Shown here: positions 845-34,318 of the stretch, in pieces | Numbering within the stretch: position 1 is the stretch's first letter | Layout of the letters: each line of letters opens with the position of its first letter | Assembly (NCBI RefSeq): GCF_001194135.2 | Contig: NC_068992.1 | Span: 9,107,519-9,150,964 of the forward strand | Source: Octopus bimaculoides | Taxonomy: Eukaryota | DNA length: 43,446 bases | Direction of reading: 5' to 3' | Notes under the pieces: generated by a model | What the model saw: the letters and a program-made list of their open reading frames with translations, nothing else | What the model was told of the DNA's origin: nothing | Databases searched by the model: none | Translations under genes and position numbers: made by a program

Positions 845-1341
<497 letters not shown>

Positions 1342-9832: not shown

Positions 9833-9926
9833 ACACACACACACACACACACAGATGTTCAACTATTTATTGNNNNNNNNNNNNNNNNNNNNNNNNNNNN
9901 NNNNNNNNNNNNNNNNNNNNNNNNNN

Positions 9927-10212
9927 TCCACAGACACGTGTACCCTTAACGAAGTTCTCGGGGATATTCAGCGTGAAACAGTGTGACGAGGCTGACCCTT
10001 TGAATTACAGGCACAACAGAAACAGGAAGTAACGGTGAGAGAAAGTTGTGGTGAAAGAGTACAGCAGGGTTCGCCACCATCACCTGCCGGAGCCTCGTGG
10101 AGCTTTTAGGTGTCTTCGCTCAATAAACACTCACAACGCCCAGTCTGGGAATCGAAACCGCGATCCTATGACCGCGAGTCCGCTGCCCTAACCACTGGGC
10201 CATTGCGCCTCC
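9927..10212 (-). mobile_element. tRNA-derived SINE family A copy (3' part lost in assembly gap)
   Basis: Reverse complement of 37749-38040, with A box TGGCCCAGTGG and B box GGTTTCGATTCCC. Confidence 0.88.
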
Positions 10213-10699
10213 ACGCTCAACTATTATCCCCTTCCAATCTTTTTCTTTCATTTTGTTCTCTTCTCAGAAATCTTATCCCATTGCATTTTTTTGTTTGCTT
10301 GTCTTTTTTTTCTCTCTAACCACCTCCCCTGTCATTATGAGACAATTATTAGCAGGAGAATGCGGCAACCATATCTTACTGCCCGACAGACACACTGACG
10401 GACGGACGGACGGACGGACTGAAAGCACAAATACCAAAACTATAGCAACTAGTGACCACTGCCACTTAAACAGCATTAATCACTGACAATAGTAACTTAC
10501 ACAGAAAAAAATTCAGTTGCTTTTTTGGCTTGACAACGCATATCCACGCCCCTTCCACCCCCTTTAACATCATTCACCCTCCTTGCAAATCTCTCGCTTT
10601 TTCTCTCTCACTGTCTTTCTCTCTATCGCCATCTATGTCAACCTCTGTCCTCTCTCTTTCACTCAAACTCTCACTTCCATCCCTCCCTTACCACTTGAT

Positions 10700-12918: not shown

Positions 12919-13103
12919 GCAGGTGTGATTAAGAAGCTTGCTTCCCAACCTCATGGTCTTGGGTTCAGTTCCACTGTGTGGCATATTGGGCAAGTGTCTT
13001 CTACTATAGTCCTGGGGAAATCAAAGCCTTGTGAGTGGATTTGGTAGATGAAAACTGAAAGAAGCCTGTCATATAAANNNNNNNNNNNNNNNNNNNNNNN
13101 NNN

Positions 13104-14202: not shown

Positions 14203-15138
14203 ATGGAAATGGAAACACACAGAACCAACTTTGCATTCATAACAGTCAACTTCATCTTTTCTTCAATTGGTGCTTTAATGTGTTTTATTTCACTTGTGTA
14301 CAAACTCTGCAAGGGAATATCTTTACCAAAATTGTGGAAATATTCCATTTGTTTACTTGATACTTCAGCATTATTCTTTGGAATTGGTCTGGTGATGCAT
14401 CTGTGTATTTTAGTACTCAATGGTACAACTCCCAAATTCCTTGTGTTGGCATCGTCAAGTTTAATGTTGTTTGGATATATGGATGGTTTGTGCTCTTTTA
14501 TTACATTCCAGACAATTCTATTATTTGTACAGAATCCAAGAAAGATATCCAGTACATCAAGCCACCAGCTTGGTTCCTCAATAATAGTACTCACTGGCAT
14601 AAAACTTGCCTGTCTGCTCCTTTCTATCTTGCCAGTCATCCCTAAACAAGACCAACTCAAACCTTCCAGGGGCAACCTCTTCCCTCTTTATGACCCACAA
14701 GAATCTGGGGGTACATACACTTCTCTGTTGGTAATTTGTTTCTGGATAGTCATCATGACCACGTTTATTTTTAGTATTATTGGATTAGTGAAATCCCAGA
14801 AGAAAAACAGCTTGGTACATGATTCCAGTGAAGACGTGCATGTTTCTGTAATATCGCAGGGACAGATGTTACACAAAATACTCCTGGTCGAACAATGCAT
14901 TTACACAGCTGTTAGCATCATGATAACACGACTACTTTTTCGGCAATCGGTTTCGCAGACGACCAACACCAATCACCACGACACAACAATTATCACAGTT
15001 AGCATTTATCTCACACTCCATGGAATTTTCACAAACCTTGGAAATTTTCTGTGGATGAAGAAAGAATGTTGTGGAAAACCAAATGACATTTCACAGGAAT
15101 CTCGTCATCTAAAACGACTGGAACTCTTACGAACGGAG
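14203..15138 (+). CDS. Fusion gene coding exon 1: seven hydrophobic segments (7TM domain) plus linker, 312 aa
   Basis: ATG at 14203 is preceded by in-frame TGA at 14167. Seven hydrophobic stretches. ECL2-TM5 SRGNLFPLYDPQESGGTYTSLL resembles the RXFP/GRL101 G-x-C-F-P-L..G..YS motif. Donor GAG|gtaaaa after 15138, phase 0. Confidence 0.85.
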
Positions 15139-18100: not shown

Positions 18101-21100
18101 TGTCATACATGCAGTGTCATTCATTTCCAGCAGATTGCAAGAACATGCCTGGCCACAGGGAAATTATTCTGTTATTTGTTATGGATTTCATTAGAACTAT
18201 TTTTATTCTTGACGTGTGTCTGGAAAAGGTAAGTCCTGATTGATTGAGAGAATAGCTTATATCAGAATATATTTCATTGCTATTTTACAGCACTCTGGTA
18301 AACATCACTTCTTAGCTTCTTGGATCGACAACAAGAAATTCCTTCAAACAGGTCTAATGAAAACCTACAGTCAAAATTGGCAGAAACTGTGGGCACAAGA
18401 AATCATGGTTCTTGGAATGTTACGAAAGGTGAAACACCCAAATCTATTGCAATGTCTTTGGACAAGCAACACTAACCCTTATTATGAAATTGTTTCTTTA
18501 CTCAGTCAAGATACAGTTTCTAGTGATTCAAGGTATTACTGTTTTTATCATTCTACCAAATAACCCCATCAAAGATCCAGGCACATCTATAACACACTAC
18601 TATATACTACATACTTACACCCAGTGCAGTCATGGGTAGACTGCAAGCTGTGGGACTCTCTGAATAGCATGCCAAATGAAACATTACCTTTAATTTATTT
18701 AGTTGTGCAGTCCACCTGATGATGAACCATGTCTCATGTGGTCTGCTTCTCAAAAAAGGTTGCCCATGCCTAACCTAGTGCAACAGTTAATAGACTATCA
18801 TTTACAATACACCACTTCCATTTACAACACTACCAACATAAATACTGCTTTCAAATTTTGGCATAAAGCCAGAAATTTCAGGGAAGGGGTTACGTTGATT
18901 ACATTGACCCCAGTACTGACAGTGCTCAACTGGTACTTATTTTTATCGACCCTGAAAGGATGAAAGGGAAAGTCGACCTTGGCAGAATTTGAACTCAGAA
19001 AGTAAAAATTAACGAAATGCCACTAAGCATTTTTCCCGCCATGCTAACAATTCTGCAAACTCACCACCTTATATCAACATAAATATTACCACGATATACA
19101 GCATGCTATCACTATATGAAATGCACAGGCACAACATCAATTTTCTGCAACCTTTGGTTCCAAAGTCATTCTGAACAACTGATTTTCCCAAACCAAATTT
19201 AATTTACTTAAATAATTAAATGAAATACAGGTACATTATTATAAATAACACAGTTTTATCAATTCAGTACTGTGTAAGGTACCAATAGACTAGTCTGGCA
19301 GCTGCAGGAATCTGAAGTTTCTCTTCATATATTAGTGAAGATTATAAGAGTTTTCAGATTATCAATATCTGGAGAGTCAGTGTTCTATCTGTACTAATAT
19401 ATACAAAATTCTACCATTTACCACAAAATATTACCACCTGATGCAAAACACTACCAGTATGTACAACATTACTATTATGTACGGCACACTAGCACCATAT
19501 ACAACACTTTATTGCTATATATAGATTGCAACCACCACATGCAACATGCTATGTACAACGCCTTACTAACAAATACAATACACAACCATCAAACACAACA
19601 CACTGTTACCTAACTTAGTGTACTACCACCTAATGCAAGACAGTGCCACTATGAACAAATATTTTTATGTGTTGTACTTTAATGGTAGTGTGTTGTATAT
19701 TGTGTATGTTGGTAGTGTACAATTATGTGGTAGTAGTGTGTTGTGTACAGTGATAGTGGTTTGTATATCTCTGCCCTTTTCATAATTTATTGATTGTGTC
19801 ATTATTTAAAAACATTTTTATACAATACTAAACAAAGAATAAAATTTATTCTGTTTTGTTTTTAAGGATTATCTGCATGGAATTTCCTGAATATGGATGT
19901 CTACGGGAATATCTTAAGACTATGGAAACTCCACTGTCTGCAGCAACACAGTGTATGATTATAAGCGATGTATCACAAGGTCTGCAGCAGCTACATCGGC
20001 TCGACATTCTACACAAGCATCTCTCTTCAATCAGAGTTTACCTTCGAGGCAACAATGGGAATGTAAGATGTTTATTATTTTACAGAATTTTTTGCAAAAA
20101 AATGTAAATTTGTTTTATATTTGTCAGACTACCTCAACCTTAATCAAAGAATACATGTTTACATGCAGAAAAAGTTGTAGGTTTAAGAAATTTGCTTTGT
20201 AACCACACGGTTCCAGGTTTCATTCCATGGTGTGGCACTTTGAACAGGTGTCTTCTACCACAACTTTGAGATGATTAAGTACCTGGTGAGCAGAATTTAC
20301 TTTTAATGTTCACCTTTCATACTGGCATGGACTGGAGTTTGATAGGATCTGAATAAATTGTATGATGCTTGTGTGTAAACAGCAATACAACATGGTAGTG
20401 ACATGGAGACCATGACTGTAGAGAACATGTAAAGACTAGAAAGGAATGAAGCTAGCATGCTCTGCTGGATGTGCAAAGTCAGCATGCATGAACGACAAAG
20501 AGCAATTCTGTTGAGCAAAAATTGAGCATAAGAGGAATCAGATGTATTGTGCAAGAGAGATGACTGCAATGTTATGGTCACATAATGTATAAGGTGGATG
20601 AAACTAGTGGACAAAGGATACCCAGAAAGACATGACACAAAGTGGCGAAGGTTGATCTCAGGAGTTTGAGTTTCATGGAGGAGATGATGAAGGGCCAGGG
20701 TGTCTGGCTACATGCTGTGCTTGAGAAGATCTGATCATCCTTGGTCAAGTGAAACTGAAGTTCTGGAAGCAACATGTCTCTATACAACTCTCATCTAATT
20801 TCTTCATTTAATGTTTCCTTCACCCCTTATTCTCTATCACTGATCTCTCCAACACTTGCCAACTACAGTGTTCTGTTGCTGTGATTAAATACAGGTAGAA
20901 CTAAATATTCTGTTATGATTTCTGTGACTCCAGTTACCTTTCTCACTACTTGAAACCACTTCAATTGCCTGCCATCCTTCATTCTTACATCATCCTATTC
21001 ATTCACATTTTACATCGATTACTCCACCTTTTTATGCTATAAAATTTCCTCTCCCTCTACCTTTCCACTGAACCAAATCACTGACTTTAGGAATTTAACT

Positions 21101-24100
21101 CAAATTTCATTATAATTGCTGAAGTATTTCGGATGAAATGTTAATAGCCCTATCCAAATCTCACCCTTTCCTGGATCCTTTAGCACTAGGATGAGTATAC
21201 CTTAGAATATCACAAGCTTTACTACTCCTATTCACACATACAAATGAAGAATACAGTCTCATTCTTGTGTTTCATATGTAAGTGTTTTATGTAGAGATAA
21301 AGAATTTCTGTGTGTAGACATACCCATAATTATTATATGATGATGATTAAGTGTGAAATTATTTCTTTCATTTCAGAATTCGTTGTTTCGTGCTGCTCTT
21401 GGGGATTTTGAATATGTAAGCATATTTGGGTCTCTACTACAAGGAGCAGATAACCCAACATGTAAGAGTCGTCAAACATTCTTCCTTCCAGACATTCGAT
21501 CTTTCGCTCTGATTACTCTAGAAATGATTCTGTCAGTATGCAACAAATTAGTCCAAATGCCAAAAAAGAATCGATATCAAAATGTAAAGACACAGAAGTC
21601 TAATCCACAAAGTATATCTGATGTAATGTTGAACAAAGCAACTCAGTGGCAACCATTAGTTAAACCTGAGAATAAAACTGTTGTAAAGGGTAAATTGGGT
21701 TTTTTTCCTACGGCAAGTGAAGAGAGTTTACATAAGAACTGGAGTGAAATGAATCCAAATTCATTGGATAAAAGTAAAATTCCTCAGACACAGCAAAGAA
21801 TAAAAACAATTTTTGTAGCTCCGGCTAATAATGCAAACATTGTGCCATCAGAGTTTTCTACAGGATATTCAAGGCATTCTTCAGTCTCACCTGAAAATGA
21901 AGATTCTCTCAGCAGCAACATTTCTATGCTTGTAGAAGCTGGAAAGGATAGTGACAGTGAAATCAGTCCAACCGAATTCAATGACTTTATTTCACCATAC
22001 GAAGATAACAAACAAGATGACTTCATCTCAGAAAATAAGTTCATTGATAGGAAAACGTCTGTAGATTCTGATCCTTATAATTATCACTGGAGCTTTTTCA
22101 CAAATAAACATGATTATAGCCCTCACAGCTTCTTTTTCAATGAACAATGCCCTAAAAGCTTTTCCGAAGAAAATAATTTAAACACACCAGAAAATAGTAA
22201 AGATGACACACATATGAATGGCGAAACAGCAGCTTTTCATGAGAAAATTCAGAGTCACACAAGAAAAGATGTTAATAACATAGCTGACGAAGATTATATT
22301 TCAGAAGAAAGTCACTTGAGAAAAGTTCAGAGAAAGAATAAAGCAAGAATGAATTTACAGAAAACTCTGACTTCTCGAGGAATGCCTTTTAATCATGTTT
22401 CATCTCAAAAACCAATAAAAGATACCTTTAAAAAAAAGAAACAATTTAATGATACACAGTCCCAAAAACCATCTCTAACTCATATTAGTTCTTCTAATTC
22501 AGTATTGCCAGGGAATAAAGCCATTCTTTCTAATCCTAATAACCATTGTAAACCTTTTAATAATAAAGTCAACAATGAGTTCAGGGAAAATACAAACGAT
22601 TATCAGTTCAGTTGTTCCAGTAGTTATCAAACCAACAACAGCTCTGATTTGGAATCATCTCAGAATTTTTCTTGTGATTACACTACTGATATATCTTGTC
22701 TTTCTTCAGCAACTGAAGCTTTAACTCGAAAAATTCTAAGGGAAGAAAAGTCATTATTTCAAAGGAATAATTCAGCTGACGACATACACAGAAAAATCAT
22801 TGACAGTGGTTTTGAAACAGAATCTAATCCTTCCAACACTTCTAACCAAATAATATGCCATCACAACTCTGAGAAACAGCAATGGCTGGAGAACTGCTTT
22901 GACATGAAAACAAAAGAGGCGGAATTCTTACCAAGTTCAGATAATTATTTATATCTTTCCAACAATAATTTCAGTATGCAAAAGAAATCATGTTTAATAT
23001 CCAACCAAGATAGTCCCATCTATAGTCCTTCTTCAAATAAGAGCAGATTTGTTTATCCAACATCTAGAAATGGTAATAGTTGTTCAAGAAGGGATGAAGT
23101 ATTTGAGACAAGTTCTTATCGAACCTATGATAATAACAAAGTTAGTAATTCTGAACTTCCGTTAATGAAATCTGAATTACAGAATAGCAACAACGCTTCA
23201 AAACGATACAGAGAACTTAAACGTAAAGGTGTACCACTGAAAATATCGATTGTGTCCTCGAATACTTCTTCGAATTTTAACCATTTCTCAAACTGTTCAC
23301 CCAGTATATCAGCGTGTTCAGAAGTCACAACACCGGACATGGATTCCAAAAACATATTTTTCCCTCCACAAATGTCACCATACCCAACAAAGGAGAATTA
23401 CGAGAGAACATGTGATGATTACCAAAGAAAAAATAGTGCCAGTTTATTTAAACAATCACTTGAAGACAGCCCAGTATTTACAACTAAAGTAATTGGAAGC
23501 CCCTGCCCACCTACACCAACAACTACTATCCCTAACTCCCTATTCATGACATCAGAGAGACCAATCCTTGAATCTCGTATCAGTTGTAGTGACATTCCAG
23601 ATTTTGGTGGGAACTGGAAATTTGGACCGAAAGGGAACAATGTGCAGAATCAAGACACAATTTCAGTTCCGAGTCGGCAATTAAGTCGACTTAACAGTGG
23701 AAGTTTATCTCACTGTTCCTCGTTATCTCACCTCAGTTTGCCAGGGAAAACCATTCAAGGAAAATATAAACTTTTACCTGGAGTAAATGAACATCATCTG
23801 GGTTATTGCATTGATCTAGTGGAAAAGCAATCCTTCCTCTCTATAGATGATTTATTACCTGCTTCACAAAGTGCCTTTAACCATCTTAAAGACAAGCTCA
23901 GTGCAACAGGTGAACTAACAAATGCAGCTAAACAGGTAAGGAACTTTGTAAATCTTACAACTCTTCTAGCATTTATCTTGCTTGTGCAGGGTTCACTTAT
24001 TCTACTGATAGATGTTGGTTCAATCAATGCATCATTCAGTCTGATCTGTGAGGCCTGCCACCATCACTTATGCCTTGTAGGACCCATTTCTCACCATAAG

Positions 24101-25187
24101 GAGGTTACTACTCTGAGACAGATTCTGAACTCGGAATGCAAAGAGCCATTTCAGGAATCACAAGGAATCCTGTTCAATGCTGTAATAATCCCTCCTTCAC
24201 TGCCTTTGTGTTTTATTTATTAACCCCAAACAGATAAAAAGCAAAGTTGATCTCAGTGGAATTAGAACTCAGAGAGCACAGAAATCTGTAACAAATGACC
24301 TCATAGTATTTTGGCTAATGCTGTATGATCTCTGAAAAATCATTACCTTTGATTTATATAAAAATTTAATTTACTTTGATTGTGTCATAAACAGTTGAAG
24401 TTGGCAAAGTAATGTTACCGTAGTGACACACAGAGGCTTAGTGAGGACACACAGAGGCTTAGTAAAGCTGATAATCTGGTTATCTTCAGAGACATGAAGG
24501 ACGAACCCTAATATTCTTGTTTAGCTCCTGATTGATTAGAATATAATGAAAAGCATCCTAGTTATGATGACCATAACTCATCCTTCCCTTTCTTTTTCTT
24601 GATATAAACCTACATTGTCTTATATCTTCTCTTTTTCTTTCCTGGTATGATGGGGATATGACTGATATTTTTAGCAGGTTGAGAGACTGCTTAGAGGCTC
24701 ACTCATTGGCATTGGCATATGGTAGAAATTGATTCCAGTACTACAAGTTAACAATACACTCTCAAGTATAAGCCAATGAGGGAGCATCTCTGCAGTCCCT
24801 CAATTTGCTAGAAATGACACTCAAAATATTCTTCAATTCACACCCTACCTTCTTTAATAAAGAAGTATACAGCAGACTATGCAGTTTCTGGAAAACAAAA
24901 GAATCGGATAATCACAGCTAGAATGCTTTTGATCATAGTTCTGCTTAACTAGAGCTTTAAAAATTGTTAGTTTTATGTCTGCATTAGAAATATGCATCAT
25001 AAATATATTAATATATTCTATGATTGTGTCAGTTTATGAAAATGTTGATATATTCTATATATTCTTTCTGTATTTTTTCCTGCAGTTGATGGATATAGTG
25101 GTATCATGCTGGTATGTTGAATCACCTCCCTTGGCAGCTAAACTATGTGAACAGCTGAAGGATCCAGTTATGGAAACAACTGTTTGA
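14203..25187 (+). CDS. 7TM (LGR/RXFP-like) - pseudokinase fusion protein, join(14203..15138,18291..18532,19867..20062,21377..23935,25086..25187), 1344 aa
   Basis: All four introns are GT..AG with compatible phases (0,2,0,0). Summed length 936+242+196+2559+102=4035 nt is a multiple of 3 and ends at TGA. Kinase subdomains appear in the correct order across exons 2-5. No N-gap in the span. Confidence 0.8.
15395..15900 (-). mobile_element. CRE-like non-LTR retrotransposon fragment (restriction-like endonuclease region), degenerate
   Basis: Minus translation HAALNDIIRRGL..PSQLEPVGLNCRYGKHSDGITLSPY, then after a frameshift EERNTNKFGGLTGCYQFLLVTIKPTGVFGPCTANFL*NIG. This parallels CRE-clade H..LND.IRR.L..EP.GL.R.DGKRPDG.T..P and Y.F.P.A.ET.GV.G. 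Confidence 0.6.
16020..17140 (-). mobile_element. R4/Dong-like LINE reverse-transcriptase fragment, heavily decayed
   Basis: Minus-strand pieces GMKFSLGK.TKATLK.GEL, SLDSEIKITNLGQIQTYKYL.NNELDGV and RRHHPES match the R4-clade GM.FG..KC, YKYLG and HHP motifs. Confidence 0.55.
17210..17450 (+). mobile_element. Degenerate SINE sharing its 3' half with family A
   Basis: ctttgtcatatgctgtgttacgctgaatctccctgagaactacaccaagggtacacatgtctgtggag matches 37970-38035. Confidence 0.6.
18291..18532 (+). CDS. Fusion gene coding exon 2: kinase N-lobe (subdomains I-IV)
   Basis: Acceptor tattttacag|CAC; donor AG|gtatta (phase 2). Encodes GLMK (VAIK-like Lys), WAQE (alphaC Glu) and KHPNLL (HPNIV-like). Confidence 0.85.
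18860..19070 (-). mobile_element. SINE family C copy in intron 2 of the fusion gene
   Basis: Reverse complement of the family C consensus (atcgaccctgaaaggatgaaagg..gaatttgaactcag..ctaagcattt). Confidence 0.8.
19867..20062 (+). CDS. Fusion gene coding exon 3: kinase subdomains V-VIb
   Basis: Acceptor tgtttttaag|G completes the AG+G Arg codon; donor AAT|gtaaga (phase 0). Encodes IICMEFPEYGCLREYL (hinge), DVSQGLQQLH, and ILHKHLSSIR at the HRDLxxxN position. Confidence 0.88.
20285..20780 (+). mobile_element. RTE-clade LINE ORF remnant
   Basis: Translates with frameshifts to LYDACV..HGS..RLERNEASML.WMC.VSMHERQ..L..KLSIRGIRCIVQER.L.CYGH, the RTE post-RT region. Same family as 30026-30102. Confidence 0.7.
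21377..23935 (+). CDS. Fusion gene coding exon 4: kinase VII and IX, ~740-aa low-complexity insert, start of subdomain X (853 aa)
   Basis: Acceptor tttcatttcag|AAT; donor CAG|gtaagg (phase 0). Lies within the 956-codon ORF 21353..24223. AALGDFE is DFG-like; PDIRSFALITLEMI is subdomain IX-like. Confidence 0.88.
25086..25187 (+). CDS. Fusion gene last coding exon: kinase subdomain XI-like and PDZ-binding C-terminus
   Basis: Acceptor ttttttcctgcag|TTG, phase 0. LMDIVVSCWYVESPPLAAKLCEQL resembles the kinase L..LM..CW......F..L..L pattern. Ends ETTV-stop. Confidence 0.8.
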   Translation: MMDIVVSCWYVESPPLAAKLCEQLKDPVMETTV

Positions 25188-26434
25188 TAATCACATCTGT
25201 TTCATTTTGATAATTTTGTCTATTTAATATAATTCATATTGATATTAATATTGATATTTCCTTTCTTGTACTTGTAAAGAAACTCAAGAAATTTCTGGAG
25301 CAAATCTACCATAATAAGACTAAACAGTTAAACAAGGCATCGGCAAACTTTCCATGGCAGTAAGTTTTATGAGAAATTGCTCGTCATAATTAGACTACAC
25401 CACTTTAAAAAAATCTAACAAATATGGCATATAATCCTGGCTATTCTGTATATCATACAAAGCAAATAATACAAAATATGTTAGAATCAGATCTAAAGAT
25501 TTGTTCATTCATTTCGCCTTTGATTGTCCTTGTTAGCAATGGTTAGATGGGGAGATACTTGAGGCAGGATTTTTATAGCTGGATGCTCTTCCAGCCATCA
25601 ACACTTACCTATTTTTCAAATATTTCTCTGACTTCAGAAGAATTCAAAAGTGCAGGGACAGAGGACAATTTCTTGAAAGGAAACGTCAATCAACATCATT
25701 ATTTGTCACCCGGCTACGAATAATGATGTCACCACTTAAAGCCCAGTTATAAATTGTGATGTCACCTCTCATTAGCATAGTTCACTGCAGCTTCTAAATA
25801 TTCACACAGACACCCATATACATACGTGCGCACACACACATACAATAGGGTTTTTGCAGTTTCTGACTACCAAATTACTCTAGGTTGGCCTGAGGGCTAC
25901 AATGGAAAACACATGCCAAAGGTGAACACACGTCCTCTTGCCCACTTCTATTAAGCTTGAAATTATTACATTCATATGAGATTAAAAAACAGAAAGTTTT
26001 AGTGTGTGAACTATCTGCTCCAAATCCAGGTAAATTTACAAATAGATACCACATCATCATCAACATCATCATCATCGTCATCGTTTTAATGCCCACTTTA
26101 TCACGCTCACATGGATTGAATGGAATTTGTGGAGATGAATTTTCTACAACTGGATGCCTCTCCTGTTGCCAACCCTGTCTCCAAGTAAATCAAGTATTTC
26201 CACACAACCAGGCATGTTTTCACAAAAGACAGGAAATGAAGGATGCCACTTGCATGATGGTGACACTTGTTAACAACAATCATCACATGACGTGGAGCCA
26301 GAGGAAATACATAGACAATAGACTTCTTTCAGTTTCTGTCTACCAAATTCACACACTAGGTTTGGTTGGCCCAGAGCTATAGTAGAAGGCCCATGGATTT
26401 AAGAATTCTACTGTTCGAAACTAACTGTAAAAAG

Positions 26435-26560
26435 CTGCCGGAGCCTTGTGGAGCTTAGGTGTTTCGCTCAATAAACACACACAACGCCCGGTCTGGGAAT
26501 CGAAACTGCGATCCTCCGACCGCGAGTCTGCTGCCCTAACCACTGGGCCATTGCGCCTCC
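26435..26560 (-). mobile_element. SINE family A head only
   Basis: Reverse complement of 37749-37875, followed on the plus strand by (TA)n(TATG)n. Confidence 0.85.
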
Positions 26561-26563
26561 TAT

Positions 26564-26630
<67 letters not shown>

Positions 26631-27956
26631 TGTCTATGTGTGTGTGTGTACTTATACCTATTCCACAAAGTTTACATATGCAGTGTAAAAACTGGAAAAC
26701 ATATACAATATATAAGTGTATAACTGTCTCCACTATACAAAGACAATAAATATAAAACATTATTAAGAACAAATAACCTATGCTTTGGTACAAACACATT
26801 CGGTGATATTTGTTCTGCCTGAGTTGCACAGACACTCCCTTATAAATCTTGCGTTCATATACAGTGTGAGCTGATGACACTGTTACTCACAAAATGTAAT
26901 ATAACTGAGTAAAATGTCAAAAGTTTGATATTAAGTTCAATATAATAAAAAATAAGAGAAATCTGTCTGATTCTGTTGTCTTTATGCATTTTATTTAAAC
27001 TCTGTCTTTTATCACTTGCTTGTTTTGGTCATTAGAGAACAGCCACACTGGAACACAGCCTTGAAGAGTTTTAATCAGAGAAATCAACCTTAGTAGTTTA
27101 CTTGCATTTCTTTTCTAAATTTGGTTTTTTATCAATCTGTTTTAGCCAAACCACAAAGCTACTAGGACATAAACAAACCGATACTAGCTGCCAAGACATG
27201 GATGGGAGGACAAACTCAACCGCACACACAGACAGACAGATAGATAGATAGATAGATAGATAGATAGTACTGGCGACGGCCACGCTCGAAATGGTGTATT
27301 TTACGTGCCACTTGCACAGGAGCCAGTCCATCGGCACTGGCAACTATATATTTAATACATAAAGCATTAAATAAGCAAACTAGAAATGGTTGAGAGAAAA
27401 AAAAGGAAAGCAATTATAAACATTTTAATACTAATTCACCTGAATCTGCTACTATTTCTTATTATACAAAATTTGCTATCTCAAACATTCATATTTAAAT
27501 TGAAACATCTCATCAAAATTTTACGTAAGAATCTTTTATTAAGTTATGTTGCAAACAACAGTTCAATATACCAAAATAGAAAAAGCTAGTTATTTTGATA
27601 AAGCTCTTCAAATTTTTCATTATTTTCAAAATTAATTGAACCAACAGGAAGTCGTCATCATCAGCAGCAGCATCATTACCACTTTAGCATCCACTTCTCC
27701 ATGGTTGCATAAGTCAGATGGAATTCATTTAGGTAGATTTTCTATGGCTGGATATTGTTCCTGTTACCATCTCTGACAGAGATGGTAACATTTTTTTCAC
27801 AGCCACGACCAGATATGCTTTCTGTATGGAAGACTGTACACAAGCAACACTACTTTTGTTTATGATGGCACACTATTTACAACTATCACATGATGTCAAG
27901 ACAATGCTACTCACAGACACATATGTACCCATACATAGATACATACACACACACAC

Positions 27957-28948: not shown

Positions 28949-29261
28949 AATGATAATAATAACAATAACAATAATAATATTAATAATAATAATAATAGAA
29001 GAGTGCCATTTGCTATCTCATGAACAATATTTCGACATCTTGCGTGTCTTCCACTGGTTCAAAAAATAANNNNNNNNNNNNNNNNNNNNNNNNNNNNNNN
29101 NNNNNNNNNNNNNNNNNNNNNNNNNNNNNNNNNNNNNNNNNNNNNNNNNNNNNNNNNNNNNNNNNNNNNNNNNNNNNNNNNNNNNNNNNNNNNNNNNNNA
29201 AAAAAAAAATAATAATAATATTAATAATAATAATAATAATATGCTTTTACAGAAAGAAGAG

Positions 29262-29515: not shown

Positions 29516-29825
29516 NNNNNNNNNNCCCCCCCCCCCCCACACACACGTGAATATACTCCTATACATTGGAGATTCCTTAAGATTTTGATACTATGAAAGT
29601 ACTTTAATTGAAGGATTATTCTTTTCATAAATTATTTTGTTTTCTGATTCCCCCACCCATGGCATACAATAATTAAATATGAAAGCGAAATGTAATTATG
29701 TCTATTAAAAATATTTCTAGCCACACGTTAATATTGCTAGGGAACCAATAATACAAATTAATTTTTATTACAATTATAACCTATATAATTATATATAACC
29801 TTATATAACCTAATAATTATAACAT

Positions 29826-31080
29826 AGGTGCAGGAGTGGTTGTGTGGTAAGTAGCTTGCTTCCCAACCACATGGTTCCGGGTTCAGTCCCACTGTGTGGC
29901 ACCTTGGGCAAGTGTCTTCTACTATAGCCTCGGGCCGACCAAAGCCTTGTGAGTGGATTTGGTAGACGGAAACTGGAAGAAGCCCGTCGTGTATGTATAT
30001 ATATATATATATATGTATGTGTAATGTCAATGTGAATACCCGTCAGAGTGTAAGTATCTTGAGAGAAAAGCTGAACATTAGAAGCATCAGTTGTGGCGTG
30101 CANNNNNNNNNNNNNNNNNNNNNNNNNNNNNNNNNNNNNNNNNNNNNNNNNNNNNNNNNNNNNNNNNNNNNNNNNNNNNNNNNNNNNNNNNNNNNNNNNN
30201 NNNNNNNNNNNNNNNNNNNNNNNNNNNNNNNNNNNNNNNNNNNNNNNNNNNNNNNNNNNNNNNNNNNNNNNNNNNNNNNNNNNNNNNNNNNNNNNNNNNN
30301 NNNNNNNNNNNNNNNNNNNNNNNNNNNNNNNNNNNNNNNNNNNNNNNNNNNNNNNNNNNNNNNNNNNNNNNNNNNNNNNNNNNNNNNNNNNNNNNNNNNN
30401 NNNNNNNNNNNNNNNNNNNNNNNNNNNNNNNNNNNNNNNNNNNNNNNNNNNNNNNNNNNNNNNNNNNNNNNNNNNNNNNNNNNNNNNNNNNNNNNNNNNN
30501 NNNNNNNNNNNNNNNNNNNNNNNNNNNNNNNNNNNNNNNNNNNNNNNNNNNNNNNNNNNNNNNNNNNNNNNNNNNNNNNNNNNNNNNNNNNNNNNNNNNN
30601 NNNNNNNNNNNNNNNNNNNNNNNNNNNNNNNNNNNNNNNNNNNNNNNNNNNNNNNNNNNNNNNNNNNNNNNNNNNNNNNNNNNNNNNNNNNNNNNNNNNN
30701 NNNNNNNNNTTGGCGTTAGGAAGGGCATCCAGCTGTAGAAACTCTGCCAAATCAGACTGGAGCCTGGTGTTGCCATCCGGTTTCACCAGTCCTCAGTCAA
30801 ATCGTCCAACCCATGCTAGCATGGAAAGCGGACGTTAAACGATGATGATGATGATGATGTGTGTGTGTTTGTGTCTGTTTGTCCCCCCAACATCGCTTGA
30901 CAACCGATGCTGGTGTGTTTACGTCCCCGTAACTTAGCGGTTCGGCAAAAAAGACCGATAGAATAAGTACTAGGCTTCTAAAGTATAAGCTCTGGAGTCG
31001 ATTTGCTCGACTATAAAGGCGGTGCTCCAGCATGGCCACAGTCAAATGGCCACTGAAACAAATAAAAGAGTAAAAGAGTA
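29826..31080 (+). mobile_element. SINE family B split by an RTE LINE insertion: head 29826-30012, RTE 30026-30858 (gap 30103-30709), tail 30860-31080
   Basis: Head and tail match the 12919-13325 copy. The insert starts with RTE coding NVNTRQSVSILREKLNIRSISCGV and ends with the (GAT)n tail. Confidence 0.8.
30103..30709. other. Assembly gap (other gaps: 973-1269, 9873-9926, 13078-13103, 29070-29199, 29516-29525)
   Basis: Runs of n. ORFs spanning them are artefacts. Confidence 0.99.
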
Positions 31081-31132: not shown

Positions 31133-31329
31133 GTCTATGAGCATTCATATTTGATCATGTATTCCTAGATATGCTGTCTCAAAAAATTGTTTCGTCATGA
31201 CCCGAAATATATCTAACATGTACAGACACGTTCTAATTACAGTGCTCTCCCCTTCGCTCTGCTATTTTTACTGCCCTCTTAGAAAAAGGAGTTACATTTA
31301 ACATTTAAGTAATCATATTTCATTCTTGT

Positions 31330-31337
31330 CACTTCCG
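31330..31337 (-). promoter_or_regulatory. ETS-like motif (CGGAAGTG on minus strand) in the SPRTN proximal region
   Basis: CACTTCCG about 75 nt upstream of the ATG. Short motif, weak evidence. Confidence 0.25.
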
Positions 31338-31409
31338 TTCATCTTTAGAATATTTAAACAACGATTTTCGTTGTCGATTTTTTTTTTGTTTCCGCTGAAT
31401 TCTTTGACT

Positions 31410-31576
31410 ATGAGTTGTTATTCTGTCACGAGTGGCTCAAAGTCACTTGTCGATCCTTCATGGGAATATATCGATCCAACACCTGATATCTTCGCAATGT
31501 TTCGGGAATTCGACAGAACCTTCTTTGGAGGAACTTTGTCTCGAGTGGAACTGAAGTGGAGCAAACGAATGACATC
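31410..31576 (+). CDS. SPRTN: SPRTN coding exon 1
   Basis: ATG at 31410; SLVDPSWEYIDPTPDIFAMF..F..TFF..L..VELKWSKRMT; donor TC|gtaagt (phase 2). Confidence 0.93.
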
Positions 31577-34256
31577 GTAAGTTGCCCTCTTGTTATTGTT
31601 TGTCAATCTGTTTCCCCCGCCTCCGTAACTCTGCCCTGACGTTCTTATGATCGTCCCATATTTCTGGATATTCAAGACTACATCGTCTAATTATTTATTT
31701 AATTATTCATTTATTAAAGTTGTAGGGTGTGGTTTGAGGAACCTATTATAAATATAAAGTGAACACACTTCACGGGGAAACCCTGAAAACGAAGTCCCAT
31801 AGCAGTTCAAGTTCGCATAATTATCTCTCTCTCGATGACATGTTATATCTACAGCTGGGGGTGGAGGTACAATGGTCCAGTGGTTAGGGCAGCGGACTCC
31901 CGGTCGTAGGGTCGCGGTTTCGAATCCCAGACCGGTCGTTGTGAGTGTTTATTGAGTGAAAACACCTAAAGCTCCACGATGCTCCGGCAGGGGATGGTGG
32001 CGAACCCTGCTGTATTCTTTCACCACAACTTTCTCTCACTCTTACTACCTGTTTCTGTTGTGCCTGTAATTCGAAGGGTCAGCCTTGTCACACTGTGTCA
32101 TGCTGAATATTCCCGAGAACTACGTTAAGGGTACATGTGTCTGTGGAGTGCTCAGCCACTTGCACGTTAATTTCACGAACAAGCTGTTCCGTTGATCGGA
32201 TCAACTGGAACCCTCGACGTTGTTGTAAACGACAGAATGTCCACGATCTACAGCTGTTATGTTTTAATTCTGTTTATATTTGTGATAGTTTCATTCTGTC
32301 TATATCCAATGTTTTAAATTGTTTTAGCTACGATAATGTATATAATTCGGTTAACAGAGTTTACAGTTGCAATCCGATAATCCATGTCAATGTATAATTC
32401 ATGGTAATTAATCTTAAATAAAGCTCCGTTAAATAGAATGAAACTGACATAAACAAGAAATGTACAGAAATAATTTTGCTGTTCCGACTGACGGAAACGA
32501 ATAAGTAAATGCTTCCGAAAACATAAAAGAAACCCCAGCCTGCTGGATGTTAACAACTGTGGAGAAAACGAATATGAAATAAGAAATCGCGGGGTGGGGA
32601 GAGGACTTTCGGAAAATCCATAAGATCCGATTTTTCCCCTCAACATTCATGAAAATGTACATATATTGAAAAAAAAATCAAAAAAAAAAAAACCAACACC
32701 CTTCCCTCCCAATTCGAGCAAGTTATCCACATGCTAGAAATAACAGCCAAATCTCACAAAACTGCGAATTTTTCATATTCGTTTTCTACAGTTGTTAATA
32801 TCCAGCAGGCTGGGGGTTTTATTGGTTTTTATTAACGGGTGTTCTTTATATTGACCTAATCTTTTAGCTTAGATCAGCTTCACTTTGTGGAACCCACTTA
32901 TTTAATGTTGTTGGTAAAGTTATTGAATACGCTATATAACTTAACTTATATATGCTTCTTAATATGCTATTAAGTTCGTTTATTTTACCTCTCTGAGCGA
33001 GAGATATACAGTAACAATACCTAATCTTATTTAGCCCCAAGAAAACATTATTGCCCTTGTATAGGACTGCCACATTATGCTGGCAAATGAATTTTACTAA
33101 GTTAATTTAATTAGTTTCGGTAATCACCAGCTCCCTCATTAGCTCAAAATACTGTTTACATTGCGTGTGTGGGATTTTTTAATGTCTACAAAACTTCCAA
33201 AATGTGTTTTTTTTGTTTTTTTTTGTTAGACACCCCAAAAGATTATCCACCATCTTTCCAACAACAGCCTCGGGCACCTCTTTTGAATTCCATATGTCAA
33301 ACACTCGTGGACATAATCACAAAATCAAAAAACAACACAGTACACATGACTTCCGGAGACATTCTTTCAGACTCAGAATTGTTGAAGCATAGAATAAACT
33401 CCTTTTATCAGTCATTCGCTGTCGAGACAATACATCCTTTAAAACTTCCAATCCGCCAACTGTACCCCTGACGGCCTCCCCACCGCCTTCTTAGTTGTAG
33501 TGCACCTGAGCACTGTATACAACAGTTTCTTTCATTTCTAAATGAGGACTAAATAGGTAAATTATTCAGTTCAGCAGAACTTTTTTTTTAAGTGCGTGTG
33601 TATGTGGGGGGGGGGGAATCAGTCCCTAATAAAATGACATCCATCCCCGAGTAAATTACTTCGGAAAGCAAACAAAAATACGTTTATTTGTTTGAAAGTT
33701 TTCGGAAGAGAAATTTATGAATGAAGCTGTTTGTCCTGACAACAGTTAATCCTAAGTTACAAGGTCTCATGATAATATATAATAGTGAAGATAAATTTTG
33801 AAAAGATACAGCTTCCTAGATATCGTTTCAGTTCATCACACCACCAAAATTCGAAAATATATACCCGAAGTATTTATTTATTCGTTTCGGTCATACAGGA
33901 TGGCCATGTTAATTTTGCCCATCCTCCATTATTGTTGGTGGTATTGTAATTAACATTGACCTACGCTGTTTGCAATGTCTTAACGATGATGGTTTTAATT
34001 TTATGTGTAACTTTCATGCGTATTTCATCTATATTTACGATGATTTAATTGTGTCTGTGATGTAAGATCCGGAATTCAAGGAAGCTGATATTTGTCCAGC
34101 ATCAGCGAAAGTTTATTCATAAAAATTGCAGTGTTTTCATTGGCATGCATTATAAATATATACAGGGTCCGACAAAATGATCTGACACATTTTTGTAACT
34201 TTAATTTATTTGCCTTTTATTAAACCTACAAATGTGTCAGATCATTTTGCCGGACC

Positions 34257-34318
<62 letters not shown>

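What the first reader, a model, noticed from the sequence alone, without database searches (positions are those of the whole stretch)
21551..23764. Kinase C-lobe split by an ~740-aa disordered insertion
Seen: the subdomain IX-like DIRSFALITLEMI is followed by ~738 codons of Ser/Asn/Lys-rich low-complexity sequence. Hydrophobic periodicity then resumes (HLGYCIDLVEK..LLP..AAKQ), and the last exon supplies the subdomain XI-like LMDIVVSCWY. Known: kinase inserts exist (PDGFR/KIT, SRPK) but usually lie at other positions and are much shorter than this. Inference: a large phosphorylation/docking platform looped out of the alphaF-alphaG region. Automated annotation would call a truncated kinase and miss the distal helices.
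Basis: partly seen in the sequence, partly recalled or inferred. Interest (0 to 1): 0.75.

Follow-up and report, generated by a model that had tools for sequence, protein, structure and literature searches.

The report
Receptor pseudokinase split by giant loop
An octopus gene encodes a membrane receptor fused to a catalytically dead kinase-like domain whose last helices lie 738 residues downstream of the rest, past a flexible insert longer than any in a human kinase; the layout is shared by many invertebrates and no study of it was found.

Summary
Window 21551-23764 is 738 in-frame codons (aa 517-1254) of Ser/Asn/Lys-rich sequence. It sits between an alphaF-like helix (PDIRSFALITLEMI) and a conserved 90-aa C-terminus. 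My five-exon gene model equals Octopus bimaculoides XP_014780971.1, annotated "uncharacterized".

Once the insert is removed, a 16-species family profile aligns end to end with canonical kinase domains (HHalign probability 99.9). The C-terminal module alone aligns to the final alphaH-alphaI "CW..P" region (P 2.8e-5; shuffles no better than 0.037). AlphaFold2 with a paired family alignment gives one compact kinase fold (pLDDT 86.8, pTM 0.86).

Two bivalve annotations split the gene in two.

- The domain is a predicted pseudokinase (HRD is HKH/HNN, DFG is DFE).
- It follows a relaxin-receptor-type 7TM domain.
- The insert carries short motifs conserved across molluscs, and the protein ends in a PDZ-ligand-like tail.

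The architecture occurs in molluscs, brachiopod, annelid, bryozoan, echinoderms, hemichordates and amphioxus. The insert's role as a docking platform is inferred, not shown.

The parts
14203..15138 (+). Exon 1, aa 1-312. N-terminal 7TM domain of LGR/relaxin-receptor type with almost no ectodomain, followed by a conserved CC after TM7 and a short linker.
   Evidence: An ATG opens the open frame and the donor is GAG|gtaaaa. The family 7TM profile A10, with octopus as first row, hits RXFP1 chain 7tmw_R at E 1.6e-13 over profile positions 18-282. The Diadema member hits Pfam 7tm_1.
18291..18532 (+). Exon 2, aa 313-393. Kinase-like N-lobe: degenerate Gly-loop (EHSGKHHF), beta3 Lys336 (18360-18362), alphaC Glu349 (18399-18401).
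   Evidence: Acceptor is ttttacag| and the phase-2 donor is AAG|gtatta. K and E are invariant in the 16-species alignment.
19867..20062 (+). Exon 3, aa 393-458. Hinge, alphaD-alphaE and the catalytic-loop equivalent ILHKHLSSIRVYL. HKH at 20012-20020 replaces HRD.
   Evidence: This is the only stretch Pfam and PDB phmmer recognise in the single sequence (PK_Tyr_Ser-Thr positions 62-133 of 258, E 1.3e-8; ITK and MLKL). No family member has the catalytic Asp.
21377..21550 (+). First part of exon 4, aa 459-516. GDFE (DFE at 21404-21412) in place of DFG, a short activation segment, and alphaF (about aa 495-513, 21485-21541).
   Evidence: Translation. The family profile aligns to PDB kinases up to the end of alphaF. 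AlphaFold2 gives helix 195-213.
21551..23764 (+). The insert, aa 517-1254 (738 aa). Ser/Asn/Lys-rich and hydrophilic. It sits between alphaF and the F-loop/alphaG.
   Evidence: Composition; hydropathy; no tandem repeats. Identity to Argonauta is 52 %, against 84 % and 80 % in the flanks. dN/dS is 0.28. Insert length in relatives ranges from 367 to 1350 aa.
22331..22369 (+). Conserved island 1 in the insert, aa 777-789: KVQRKNKARMNLQKTL, a basic K(R/K)xKARxxLK(R/K)AL motif.
   Evidence: Conserved in 18 molluscan sequences.
22619..22714 (+). Conserved Ser-rich islands, aa 873-904: SYQTNNSS...DISCLSSATEAL. In other molluscs this reads KRYSSFSSNxS...DVSLTSGE.SSLSSQA.
22799..22843 (+). Conserved island, aa 933-947: IIDSGFETESNPSNT. 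DSGF(D/E)(S/T) is present in all 18 molluscan sequences. It fits the DSGxx(S/T) beta-TrCP phosphodegron pattern (pattern recalled from my own knowledge, not tested).
23195..23254 (+). Conserved island, aa 1065-1084: ASKRYRELKRKGVPLKISIV. Family consensus is (A/S)(S/T)(K/R)RYRELxxKGVPLRVSV.
   Evidence: tblastn hit to the Solemya locus at 53 % identity; alignments.
23396..23764 (+). Last 123 aa of the insert, aa 1132-1254. P/S/T-rich with RxxS repeats (SRQLSRLNSGSLSH). It is the most constrained part of the insert among cephalopods.
   Evidence: dN/dS 0.035, from 3 nonsynonymous and 20 synonymous differences.
23765..23935 (+). End of exon 4, aa 1255-1311. F-loop-like KLLPG, alphaG (about aa 1263-1275, 23789-23827), an extra helix (about aa 1289-1301, 23867-23905) and the start of alphaH (aa 1307-1311).
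   Evidence: AlphaFold2 gives helices 224-236, 250-262 and 268-282 at pLDDT 70-91. HHalign in the context of alphaF. 79-80 % identity among cephalopods. Conserved in the Solemya locus.
25086..25187 (+). Exon 5, aa 1312-1344 plus stop. Rest of alphaH (LMDIVVSCWY), alphaI (about aa 1328-1336, 25134-25160) and the tail ...DPVMETTV (ETTV at 25173-25184), which resembles a class I PDZ ligand.
   Evidence: HHalign of the C-terminal profile alone to canonical positions 225-255 of 256, P 2.8e-5. The Solemya last exon is 47 % identical, with the same phase-0 intron after Q. The last 5 residues have pLDDT below 50. Tail motifs across the family.

Best explanation
**What it is.** The region is the middle of one gene, O. 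bimaculoides LOC106876778. The gene encodes a membrane protein built from four parts:
- a relaxin-receptor/LGR-type seven-helix (7TM) domain with no ectodomain;
- immediately after it, a TKL-like protein-kinase fold that has lost the catalytic Asp and Asn and the DFG glycine, so it is a predicted pseudokinase;
- a 738-aa hydrophilic, fast-evolving insert that leaves the fold directly after helix alphaF;
- the return of the chain as the F-loop, alphaG, one extra helix, alphaH and alphaI, which complete the C-lobe. The last five residues form a free tail resembling a PDZ ligand.

**What is shown.** The gene structure; the continuity of the reading frame in an mRNA of a relative; the homology of both flanks to one kinase domain; a confident single-domain model; and conservation of this split from molluscs to hemichordates and amphioxus.

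**What is inferred.**
- The insert is an intrinsically disordered closed loop, with both ends pinned to the C-lobe.
- The loop displays short conserved motifs: a DSGxxS degron-like site, a basic KxKARxxLK motif, SKRYREL..KGVPLRVS, and Ser-rich and RxxS clusters.
- These motifs bind or are modified by partner proteins, so the protein acts as a membrane-anchored scaffold or switch rather than an enzyme.
For: **Gene model and transcript**
- The model is identical to RefSeq XP_014780971.1.
- A spliced mRNA contig of a related cephalopod is colinear with the exons and keeps the insert.

**Conservation**
- Flanks are more conserved than the insert: 84 % and 80 % against 52 % identity to Argonauta, and 77 % and 79 % against 37 % to a second cephalopod.
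- dN/dS is 0.07 and 0.11 in the flanks against 0.28 in the insert.
- An exhaustive HMM search finds about 20 full or partial orthologues with two matched stretches separated by 367-1350 aa.
- Species are Argonauta, Argopecten, Pinctada, Patella, Biomphalaria, Plakobranchus, Lingula, Owenia, Watersipora, Antedon, Ptychodera, Saccoglossus, Diadema and Branchiostoma.
- The Solemya locus has the same exon structure and the same intron inside alphaH.

**Homology of the C-terminal module to the kinase C-lobe**
- HHalign of the insert-deleted family against 125 canonical kinase domains: probability 99.9, full length.
- C-terminal module alone: alphaH-alphaI register, P 2.8e-5 against best shuffle 0.037.
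- alphaF plus C-terminus: probability 95, runs to the template end.
- Negative control with native insert sequence stops at alphaF.
- Family profile against PDB: ActRIIA is aligned over profile positions 36-287.

**Structure**
- AlphaFold2: pLDDT 86.8, pTM 0.86. The helix order alphaF, alphaG, extra helix, alphaH, alphaI has lengths close to the canonical blocks (block lengths from PMC6930252 Table 2).
- Foldseek best matches are MerTK, RET, ULK2 and JAK2, with alignments spanning about the whole query.

**Pseudokinase call.** HRD is H(K/N/R/S/G)(H/N/R) and DFG is DFE in nearly all of 16 species, while beta3-Lys and alphaC-Glu are invariant.

**7TM.** The family profile hits RXFP1 at E 1.6e-13.

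**Motif islands.**
Against: **Sequence searches that do not see the link**
- Single-sequence HMMER does not extend past the catalytic loop even after the insert is deleted.
- The C-terminal profile alone finds no kinase among PDB sequences; the best hit is uromodulin at E 0.39.
- Independent profile-profile support covers only the last 30 or so residues, at 74 % probability. The alphaG assignment rests on context alignment and on the model.

**Limits of the structure model**
- The model was made on an insert-deleted construct, which forces the two ends together.
- I could not inspect coordinates or PAE.
- Foldseek TM-scores are moderate (about 0.6, rmsd 5-8 A).
- A first AlphaFold2 run with a 6-row alignment failed (pLDDT 37).

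**Function.** Disorder of the insert and any binding or phosphorylation of its motifs are untested. No expression or protein data exist for the octopus gene itself.
Confidence: 0.8

Rival explanations
1. The kinase-like domain really ends after alphaF. The conserved C-terminal 90 aa would then be an independent helical module, for example a partner-binding or dimerisation domain with a PDZ-ligand tail, that only superficially resembles subdomain XI.
For: - Pfam and phmmer see only a truncated kinase.
- The C-terminal profile alone gives no kinase hit among PDB sequences.
- Independent HHalign support is 74 % probability over about 30 columns only.
Against: - The register of the independent hit is exactly the last 30 positions of the kinase domain, and it beats 30 shuffles by three orders of magnitude in P.
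- alphaF plus C-terminus aligns to the template end at 95 %, whereas alphaF plus native insert does not.
- AlphaFold2 gives a single domain with pTM 0.86, which is hard to reach if 28 % of the chain were unplaced.
- The module is as conserved as the kinase core.
- From general knowledge of the kinase fold: a fold lacking the GHI helices would expose the hydrophobic face of alphaE/alphaF.
Confidence: 0.1
2. It is an active kinase with a regulatory insert, as in Greatwall/MASTL, rather than a pseudokinase. Catalysis would use a non-canonical arrangement.
For: beta3-Lys, alphaC-Glu and the Asp of DFE are conserved in almost all members. From my own knowledge, some kinases that lack canonical residues still catalyse (WNK, CASK, SelO).
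Against: - The catalytic-loop Asp is absent in all 16 species, which have HKH, HNN, HRN, HSR or HGN instead.
- The downstream Asn is absent.
- The Gly-rich loop is reduced to one Gly or none.
- The DFG Gly is Glu.
Confidence: 0.07
3. The long open frame is an annotation or assembly artefact. Candidates are a retained intron, an exonised repeat, or two neighbouring genes read as one.
For: The Solemya and Mytilus annotations do call two genes. The window contains assembly gaps elsewhere.
Against: - 958 stop-free codons.
- dN/dS of 0.28, with no frame breaks against a relative.
- No tandem repeats.
- Motif islands conserved across molluscan classes.
- A spliced mRNA contig in another cephalopod carries N-lobe, insert and C-terminus in one ORF.
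- RefSeq models in Octopus sinensis, Argopecten, Patella, Biomphalaria, Lingula, Ptychodera and others have the same layout.
Confidence: 0.02

Closest known systems
Greatwall/MASTL non-conserved middle region. Also RPS6KC1, SRPK spacer, PDGFR/KIT kinase insert and CDC7 inserts.
   Same: A eukaryotic protein-kinase fold interrupted by a long, poorly conserved and presumably flexible insert. Alignment tools and annotators lose the distal part of the domain. PMC6930252 documents exactly this for MASTL, RPS6KC1 and CDC7.
   Different: **Position.** MASTL's 548 aa lie in the activation loop, RPS6KC1's 480 aa between alphaD and alphaE, SRPK2's 298 aa after the catalytic loop, and CDC7's 98-109 aa between alphaG and alphaH. 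Here the insert follows alphaF. At that position human kinases tolerate at most 13 aa (HF~FL, BMPR2) or 46 aa (FL~HG, MAP2K2), per PMC6930252 Table 2.

**Size.** 738 aa here and up to about 1350 aa in relatives, longer than any human kinase insert.

**Activity.** The host domain here is a predicted pseudokinase.
GPCR-kinase fusions: GPCR-TKL/K of acanthoecid choanoflagellates, oomycetes and amoebozoans; GPCR-TK of choanoflagellates and sponges; GPCR-PIPK.
   Same: An N-terminal 7TM domain followed by a cytoplasmic kinase-like domain. None has been characterised functionally (PMC12716839).
   Different: - PMC12716839 reports such fusions in holozoans only for choanoflagellates and sponges. This family is in bilaterians: spiralians, ambulacrarians and amphioxus.
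- The 7TM here is LGR/relaxin-receptor-like class A.
- The kinase is catalytically degenerate and split by the insert.
- Homology to those families' 7TM or kinase domains was not tested.
Relaxin-family/LGR class A GPCRs (RXFP1, TSHR, FSHR)
   Same: The 7TM domain profile matches RXFP1 over all seven helices (E 1.6e-13). The sea-urchin member matches RXFP1, TSHR, FSHR and beta2AR. The amphioxus member is auto-named RXFP2.
   Different: There is no LRR/LDLa ectodomain; the model starts about 10 aa before TM1. By inspection of the alignment, the DRY and NPxxY positions are not conserved in octopus. The C-terminal tail is replaced by a pseudokinase.
TKL-group kinases and pseudokinase domains (LIMK1, LRRK2, RAF, ActRIIA/BMPR2, TYK2/JAK JH2, MLKL)
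   Same: These are the best sequence-profile matches of the kinase core. The 'CW..P' alphaH motif is typical of TK/TKL kinases. ActRIIA is the PDB hit whose alignment runs furthest into the C-terminal module (profile 36-287; PKR reaches 263).
   Different: Identity is 13-18 % in structural alignments. No orthology to any named subfamily was established.

Membership tests
Eukaryotic protein-kinase fold (ePK, TK/TKL-like) | N-lobe with beta3 Lys and alphaC Glu | tested here: met
   K336 (GLMK) and E349 (WAQEI) are invariant in 16 species. The AlphaFold2 N-lobe has pLDDT 92-96.
Eukaryotic protein-kinase fold (ePK, TK/TKL-like) | C-lobe core: alphaE, catalytic loop, alphaF | tested here: met
   Pfam PK_Tyr_Ser-Thr E 1.3e-8. 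The family profile against PDB kinases runs up to alphaF, E down to 5e-19.
Eukaryotic protein-kinase fold (ePK, TK/TKL-like) | GHI subdomain (alphaG, alphaH, alphaI) completing the C-lobe | tested here: met
   It is supplied by aa 1255-1339 after the insert.
- HHalign gives 99.9 % full length, 95 % for alphaF plus C-terminus, and 74 % with P 2.8e-5 for the C-terminus alone, restricted to alphaH-alphaI.
- AlphaFold2 helices have pLDDT 70-91 and pTM is 0.86.
- Coordinates and PAE were not inspected.
Catalytically active protein kinase | HRD catalytic Asp and downstream Asn | tested here: not met
   ILHKHLSSIRVYL in octopus. Other species have H(N/R/S/G)(N/R) L. There is no Asp or Asn at these positions in any of 16 species.
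Catalytically active protein kinase | DFG motif and Gly-rich loop GxGxxG | tested here: not met
   GDFE: the Asp is kept and the Gly is replaced by Glu. The Gly-loop is EHSGKHHF with a single Gly.
Kinases with a known insert position (MASTL, RPS6KC1, SRPK, PDGFR/KIT, CDC7) | Insert located in the activation loop, alphaD-alphaE, after the catalytic loop, or alphaG-alphaH | tested here: not met
   The insert lies directly after alphaF and before the F-loop/alphaG. Positions for the human kinases are from PMC6930252 Table 2.
Class A GPCR, LGR/relaxin-receptor type | Seven-helix domain homologous to the rhodopsin family | tested here: met
   Family profile A10 against RXFP1, E 1.6e-13, profile positions 18-282. 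Pfam 7tm_1 in the Diadema member scores 27.8 bits, just under the 30.5 cutoff. Pfam finds nothing in the octopus sequence alone.
Class A GPCR, LGR/relaxin-receptor type | Large LRR (with or without LDLa) ectodomain | tested here: not met
   The model and RefSeq protein start about 10 aa before TM1. Upstream exons cannot be fully excluded but are absent from all orthologue models.
Class A GPCR, LGR/relaxin-receptor type | E/DRY and NPxxY activation motifs | tested here: inconclusive
   By eye in the alignment and the sequences, octopus has ...LLFVQNP... and ...LHGIFTNLGNF... at these positions. Ptychodera keeps HPILY and Diadema GPVIY. No formal motif scan was done.
GPCR-kinase fusions (GPCR-TKL/K, GPCR-TK) | 7TM domain followed by a kinase domain in one polypeptide | tested here: met
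GPCR-kinase fusions (GPCR-TKL/K, GPCR-TK) | Common descent with the choanoflagellate, sponge or oomycete families | not tested
   Those sequences were not retrieved. PMC12716839 argues that such fusions arose repeatedly.
Class I PDZ ligand | C-terminal x-(S/T)-x-hydrophobic-COOH, accessible | tested here: inconclusive
   The pattern is present: ETTV, ETEL, ETEV, STDI, VTEI, ETPL and SSPV in most members. The tail is low-confidence (pLDDT <50, consistent with disorder) in the model. Binding was not tested, and the consensus is from my own knowledge.

The most novel reading that the evidence does not exclude
This may be an undescribed class of bilaterian receptor: an LGR-type 7TM domain fused directly to a pseudokinase. 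Completion of the C-lobe across a loop of 370-1350 aa would itself be the signalling step. The alphaG-alphaI module could dock, undock, or swap between protomers (domain-swapped dimers). Phosphorylation or partner binding at the conserved loop motifs would control this, including the DSGxxS degron-like site and the RxxS cluster next to the re-entry point.
Probability: 0.12. Interest if true: 0.85.

Novelty: new variant of a known kind. Interest (0 to 1): 0.66.

Why it matters
**For kinase structure.** Kinase domains interrupted by long inserts are known. An insert directly after alphaF is not found in the human kinome, where the maximum at that position is 13-46 aa. This one is also longer than the record human insert (548 aa in MASTL). 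So the kinase fold can tolerate, for several hundred million years, a loop several times its own size at the base of the C-lobe, next to the GHI protein-docking surface.

**For receptor biology.** The host protein links a relaxin-receptor-type 7TM domain to a pseudokinase. It occurs in molluscs, annelid, brachiopod, bryozoan, echinoderms, hemichordates and amphioxus. A 2025 survey of GPCR-kinase fusions reported them in holozoans only in choanoflagellates and sponges, and none has been studied functionally. This gives a concrete and widely conserved candidate for how a 7TM receptor might signal through a scaffold rather than through G proteins alone.

**For annotation.** Domain callers truncate this kinase, and gene predictors split the gene, as in Solemya and Mytilus. 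Kinome and GPCR censuses of invertebrates therefore probably miss or misclassify the family; some members are auto-named LRRK2 or RXFP2.

Tried and rejected
**Dead ends and negative results**
The hit did not extend. Phmmer against PDB covered only the hinge to the catalytic loop.
- Three word-indexed homologue searches returned only four proteins. The family appeared only in the exhaustive HMM search.
- The first AlphaFold2 job used a 6-row alignment in which N and C parts were unpaired. It failed (pLDDT 37) and was discarded.
I solved this by aligning whole orthologue proteins to the insert-deleted octopus query, so that N and C flanks stay paired.
- The C-terminal profile against PDB sequences gave no kinase hit, only noise. 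I report this as evidence against.
- Model coordinates are not exposed, so I could not compute contacts between the C-terminal helices and alphaE/alphaF.

**Alternatives considered and rejected**
- An alternative alphaG at the start of the insert (cephalopod GKLGFFPTASEESLHKNW). It is not conserved outside cephalopods, and HHalign stops at alphaF.
- The insert as a microsatellite or tandem expansion. There are no tandem repeats.

**Literature.** Searches for the gene identifiers found nothing. A search for mollusc 7TM pseudokinases found nothing relevant.
Full report
**1. What is in the sequence**

The window is AT-rich animal DNA with assembly gaps. Around the finding, the + strand carries five exons with GT-AG borders and matching phases:
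- 14203-15138
- 18291-18532
- 19867-20062
- 21377-23935
- 25086-25187

The 1344-aa product is identical to XP_014780971.1 / UniProt A0A0L8GI26, "uncharacterized protein LOC106876778 [Octopus bimaculoides]".

The finding's coordinates are exact. PDIRSFALITLEMI is aa 496-509, and window 21551-23764 is aa 517-1254, which is 738 codons. The insert has these properties:
- S 15.7 %, N 10.5 %, K 8.1 %.
- Mean hydropathy -0.98, with no hydrophobic 19-aa window.
- No tandem repeats at DNA level.

The frame then continues through KLLPGVNEHHLGYCIDLVEK...NAAKQ to a gtaagg donor. The last exon supplies LMDIVVSCWYVESPPLAAKLCEQLKDPVMETTV and the stop.

**2. It is real coding sequence in one transcript**

- A 4263-nt contig from another cephalopod (L004) carries an uninterrupted 1309-aa ORF. 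It aligns to the window only over the exons. The blocks end at 18532, 20062 and about 23935 and restart at about 19864, 21392 and 25083, so it is a spliced mRNA that keeps the insert.
- Against a genomic contig of a close relative (L002), the insert has dN/dS 0.28 with no frame breaks. The alphaF flank has 0.07 and the downstream flank 0.11. The last 123 aa of the insert reach 0.035.
- Against Argonauta and a second cephalopod, identity is 84 % and 77 % for the kinase N part, 80 % and 79 % for the C-terminal 90 aa, and only 52 % and 37 % for the insert.

**3. A family with the same split**

Word-indexed searches found little. An exhaustive HMM search with the insert-deleted octopus protein plus the Solemya orthologue found 21 proteins below E 1e-30. 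Most of the longer ones had two matched stretches: 7TM plus kinase up to alphaF, and a block of about 88 aa at the very C-terminus.

Insert lengths range from 367 to 1350 aa.

Named members come from these species:
- Cephalopods: Argonauta, Octopus sinensis/vulgaris.
- Bivalves: Argopecten, Pinctada.
- Gastropods: Patella, Biomphalaria, Plakobranchus.
- Other spiralians: Lingula (brachiopod), Owenia (annelid), Watersipora (bryozoan).
- Deuterostomes: Antedon and Diadema (echinoderms), Ptychodera and Saccoglossus (hemichordates), Branchiostoma (amphioxus).

All are "uncharacterized" or auto-named LRRK2 or RXFP2.

In the Solemya velum genome (L001) the exons are arranged as in octopus, including a phase-0 intron after the Gln inside the predicted alphaH. 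The annotation, however, breaks the gene into two "hypothetical proteins". Mytilus shows the same split.

**4. Is the C-terminal module the rest of the kinase domain?**

Negative results first:
- Pfam on the single sequence matches only profile positions 62-133 of 258, and deleting the insert changes nothing.
- All relatives tested are likewise called as truncated kinases.
- A 21-sequence profile of the C-terminal module alone finds no kinase among PDB sequences.

Positive results:
- A 16-species insert-deleted alignment (A6) searched against PDB sequences aligns most kinases up to the end of alphaF. ActRIIA, however, aligns over profile positions 36-287.
- I built a reference alignment of 125 complete canonical kinase domains from unrelated hits of the same search. 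Their domain limits were checked with Pfam.
- HHalign of A6 against this reference gives probability 99.9, with query 26-303 aligned to template 18-255 of 256. "QLLdIv..CW..e.PP....L..QL" lies on "l..li..CW..dP..RPt..ei...L".
- The C-terminal module alone aligns its columns 56-84 to template 225-255 with P 2.8e-5 and probability 74 %. Thirty column-shuffled controls gave at best P 0.037, and the reversed alignment gave 0.1.
- alphaF plus the module aligns to template 182-256 at 95 % (P 3.6e-8).
- alphaF plus the first 140 aa of the native insert aligns only to the end of alphaF.

**5. Structure prediction**

A first run with a shallow, unpaired alignment failed (pLDDT 37).

For the second run I aligned whole orthologue proteins to the insert-deleted octopus query. 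Each row then keeps its own N and C flanks, and I checked the alignment by eye. The result:
- Mean pLDDT 86.8 and pTM 0.86.
- alphaF is model residues 195-213.
- The artificial junction at 216-220 is low confidence.
- Helices follow at 224-236 (alphaG, 13 residues), 250-262 (extra helix), 268-282 (alphaH) and 289-297 (alphaI), with block pLDDT 70-91.
- The last five residues have pLDDT below 50 (low confidence, consistent with disorder).

Foldseek against the PDB returns only protein kinases at the top: MerTK, RET, ULK2, JAK2, MET, EphA2, EGFR. Alignments are about as long as the query, with TM about 0.6.

Coordinates and PAE were not available to me. The claim that the helices pack on the C-lobe therefore rests on pTM, pLDDT and the helix order, not on measured contacts.

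**6. What kind of kinase domain**

Across 16 species:
- The beta3 Lys and alphaC Glu are invariant, and the Asp of DFG is mostly kept.
- HRD is H(K/N/R/S/G)(H/N/R), so no catalytic Asp is present, and the downstream Asn is also missing.
- DFG is DFE.
- The Gly-rich loop is degenerate.

This is the signature of a pseudokinase that may still bind nucleotide. That last point is inference. The nearest sequence relatives are TKL-group and TK domains: LIMK1, LRRK2, RAF, ActRIIA, TYK2 JH2 and MLKL.

**7. The rest of the protein**

- Exon 1 encodes seven hydrophobic segments.
- A family profile with octopus as first row matches the 7TM domain of relaxin receptor RXFP1 at E 1.6e-13 over all helices.
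- The sea-urchin member matches RXFP1, TSHR, FSHR and beta2AR, and Pfam 7tm_1.
- There is no ectodomain.
- A conserved CC or CCC follows TM7.
- The protein ends in ETTV, ETEL, STDI, VTEI or similar in most species, which is a class I PDZ-ligand pattern (the consensus is from my own knowledge).

**8. The insert is not featureless**

Eighteen molluscan sequences share ordered islands:
- K(R/K)xKARxxLK(R/K)AL, aa 777-789.
- Ser-rich blocks, aa 873-904.
- DSGF(D/E)(S/T)xS, aa 933-947. This fits the beta-TrCP degron pattern DSGxx(S/T), which is a lead from memory and not tested.
- (A/S)SKRYRELxxKGVPL(R/K)(V/I)S, aa 1065-1084.
- (L)ESKGFF, aa 1109-1119.

Cephalopods add a strongly constrained P/S/T- and RxxS-rich stretch just before the chain re-enters the fold.

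**9. How it most likely works**

Shown: one polypeptide; a kinase-like fold whose GHI helices are encoded after the insert; both conserved since before the protostome-deuterostome split.

Inferred:
- The insert is a disordered closed loop anchored at both ends to the base of the C-lobe.
- It presents short linear motifs for binding, phosphorylation and perhaps regulated degradation.
- The pseudokinase and the PDZ-type tail make the protein a membrane scaffold or switch downstream of an orphan LGR-like 7TM domain.

I hold the structural statement at about 0.8 and the docking-platform statement at about 0.5.

**10. Comparison with what is known**

Modi and Dunbrack's alignment of 497 human kinase domains (PMC6930252, Table 2 and text) lists the longest inserts:

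| Kinase | Insert length | Position |
|---|---|---|
| MASTL | 548 aa | activation loop |
| RPS6KC1 | 480 aa | alphaD-alphaE |
| SRPK2 | 298 aa | after the catalytic loop |
| EIF2AK3 | 220 aa | beta4-beta5 |
| CDC7 | 98-109 aa | alphaG-alphaH |
| BMPR2 | 13 aa | between alphaF and the F-loop |
| MAP2K2 | 46 aa | between the F-loop and alphaG |

The same paper notes that earlier alignments lost the distal helices of MASTL, RPS6KC1 and CDC7. The present insert is therefore of a known kind, but at a new position and of unprecedented length.

For the whole protein, the 2025 eLife survey of GPCRs in close relatives of animals (PMC12716839) makes three relevant statements. 7TM-kinase fusions were known from oomycetes and amoebozoans. 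[quoted passage not shown] None has been functionally characterised.

I found no paper naming this gene or its orthologues. The bilaterian family described here thus appears undescribed within the literature I could search.

**11. Verdict**

The finding is best filed as a new variant of a known kind: a kinase-fold insert and a GPCR-kinase fusion. Interest is moderately high because of the insert's position and size, its deep conservation, and the unstudied receptor architecture around it.

Noticed in passing
window 31300-42011 (+): The next gene downstream is Spartan/SPRTN-like. SprT-like domain at 36723-36989 (Pfam E 7.5e-5). Spartan zinc-binding domain at 39047-39373 (E 5.9e-26). A long Ser/Lys-rich C-terminal ORF at 40641-42011.
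   Followed up: partly
L001 10001-31257 and 31452-34023 (Solemya velum); P0004 (Mytilus galloprovincialis): Public annotations split the orthologous gene in two. The distal half of the insert plus the alphaG-alphaI module is deposited as a separate 'hypothetical protein' with no domain. In Solemya the frame changes between 31254 and 31380, which could be a small intron or an assembly frameshift. This is unresolved.
   Followed up: partly
window 14203-15138 (+): The N-terminal exon is a relaxin-receptor/LGR-type class A 7TM domain without any ectodomain. The DRY and NPxxY positions look degenerate in octopus but are partly kept in hemichordate and sea-urchin members. A CC/CCC motif follows TM7, which resembles a palmitoylation site.
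   Followed up: partly
window 23396-23764 (+): The last 123 aa of the 'variable' insert are under stronger constraint between two octopus species (dN/dS 0.035) than the kinase flanks. They contain repeated RxxS sites (SRQLSRLNSGSLSH) right before the chain re-enters the fold.
   Followed up: no
window 23921-23935 / 25086-25115, and L001 about 33107 / 33919: The intron that separates the last exon falls inside the predicted alphaH. It is at the same position and phase (after Gln) in octopus and in the bivalve Solemya.
   Followed up: yes
window about 10172-10483, 26431-26720, 31706-31948 (-), 37633-37851 (-): A dispersed repeat, perhaps SINE-like, recurs. It gives near-identical pseudo-peptides ('CPNHWAIAPP', 'SAALTTGPLRL') in open frames at several places, including introns of the neighbouring gene.
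   Followed up: no
window 973-1269, 9873-9926, 13078-13103, 29070-29199, 29516-29525, 30103-30709: There are runs of N (assembly gaps). None lies inside the exons of the gene studied.
   Followed up: yes
window 9443-9862 (-): By eye this open frame resembles the C-terminal part of a LINE reverse transcriptase (…FELMHFGRK…NLNWRAHI…). Pfam gave no hit at E 0.01 or below.
   Followed up: partly
P0055, P0067: A separate family of single-pass receptor kinases was picked up by the same profile. These have an intact HRDLKxxN and DFG and a contiguous C-lobe. They may be the closest active relatives of the pseudokinase core.
   Followed up: no
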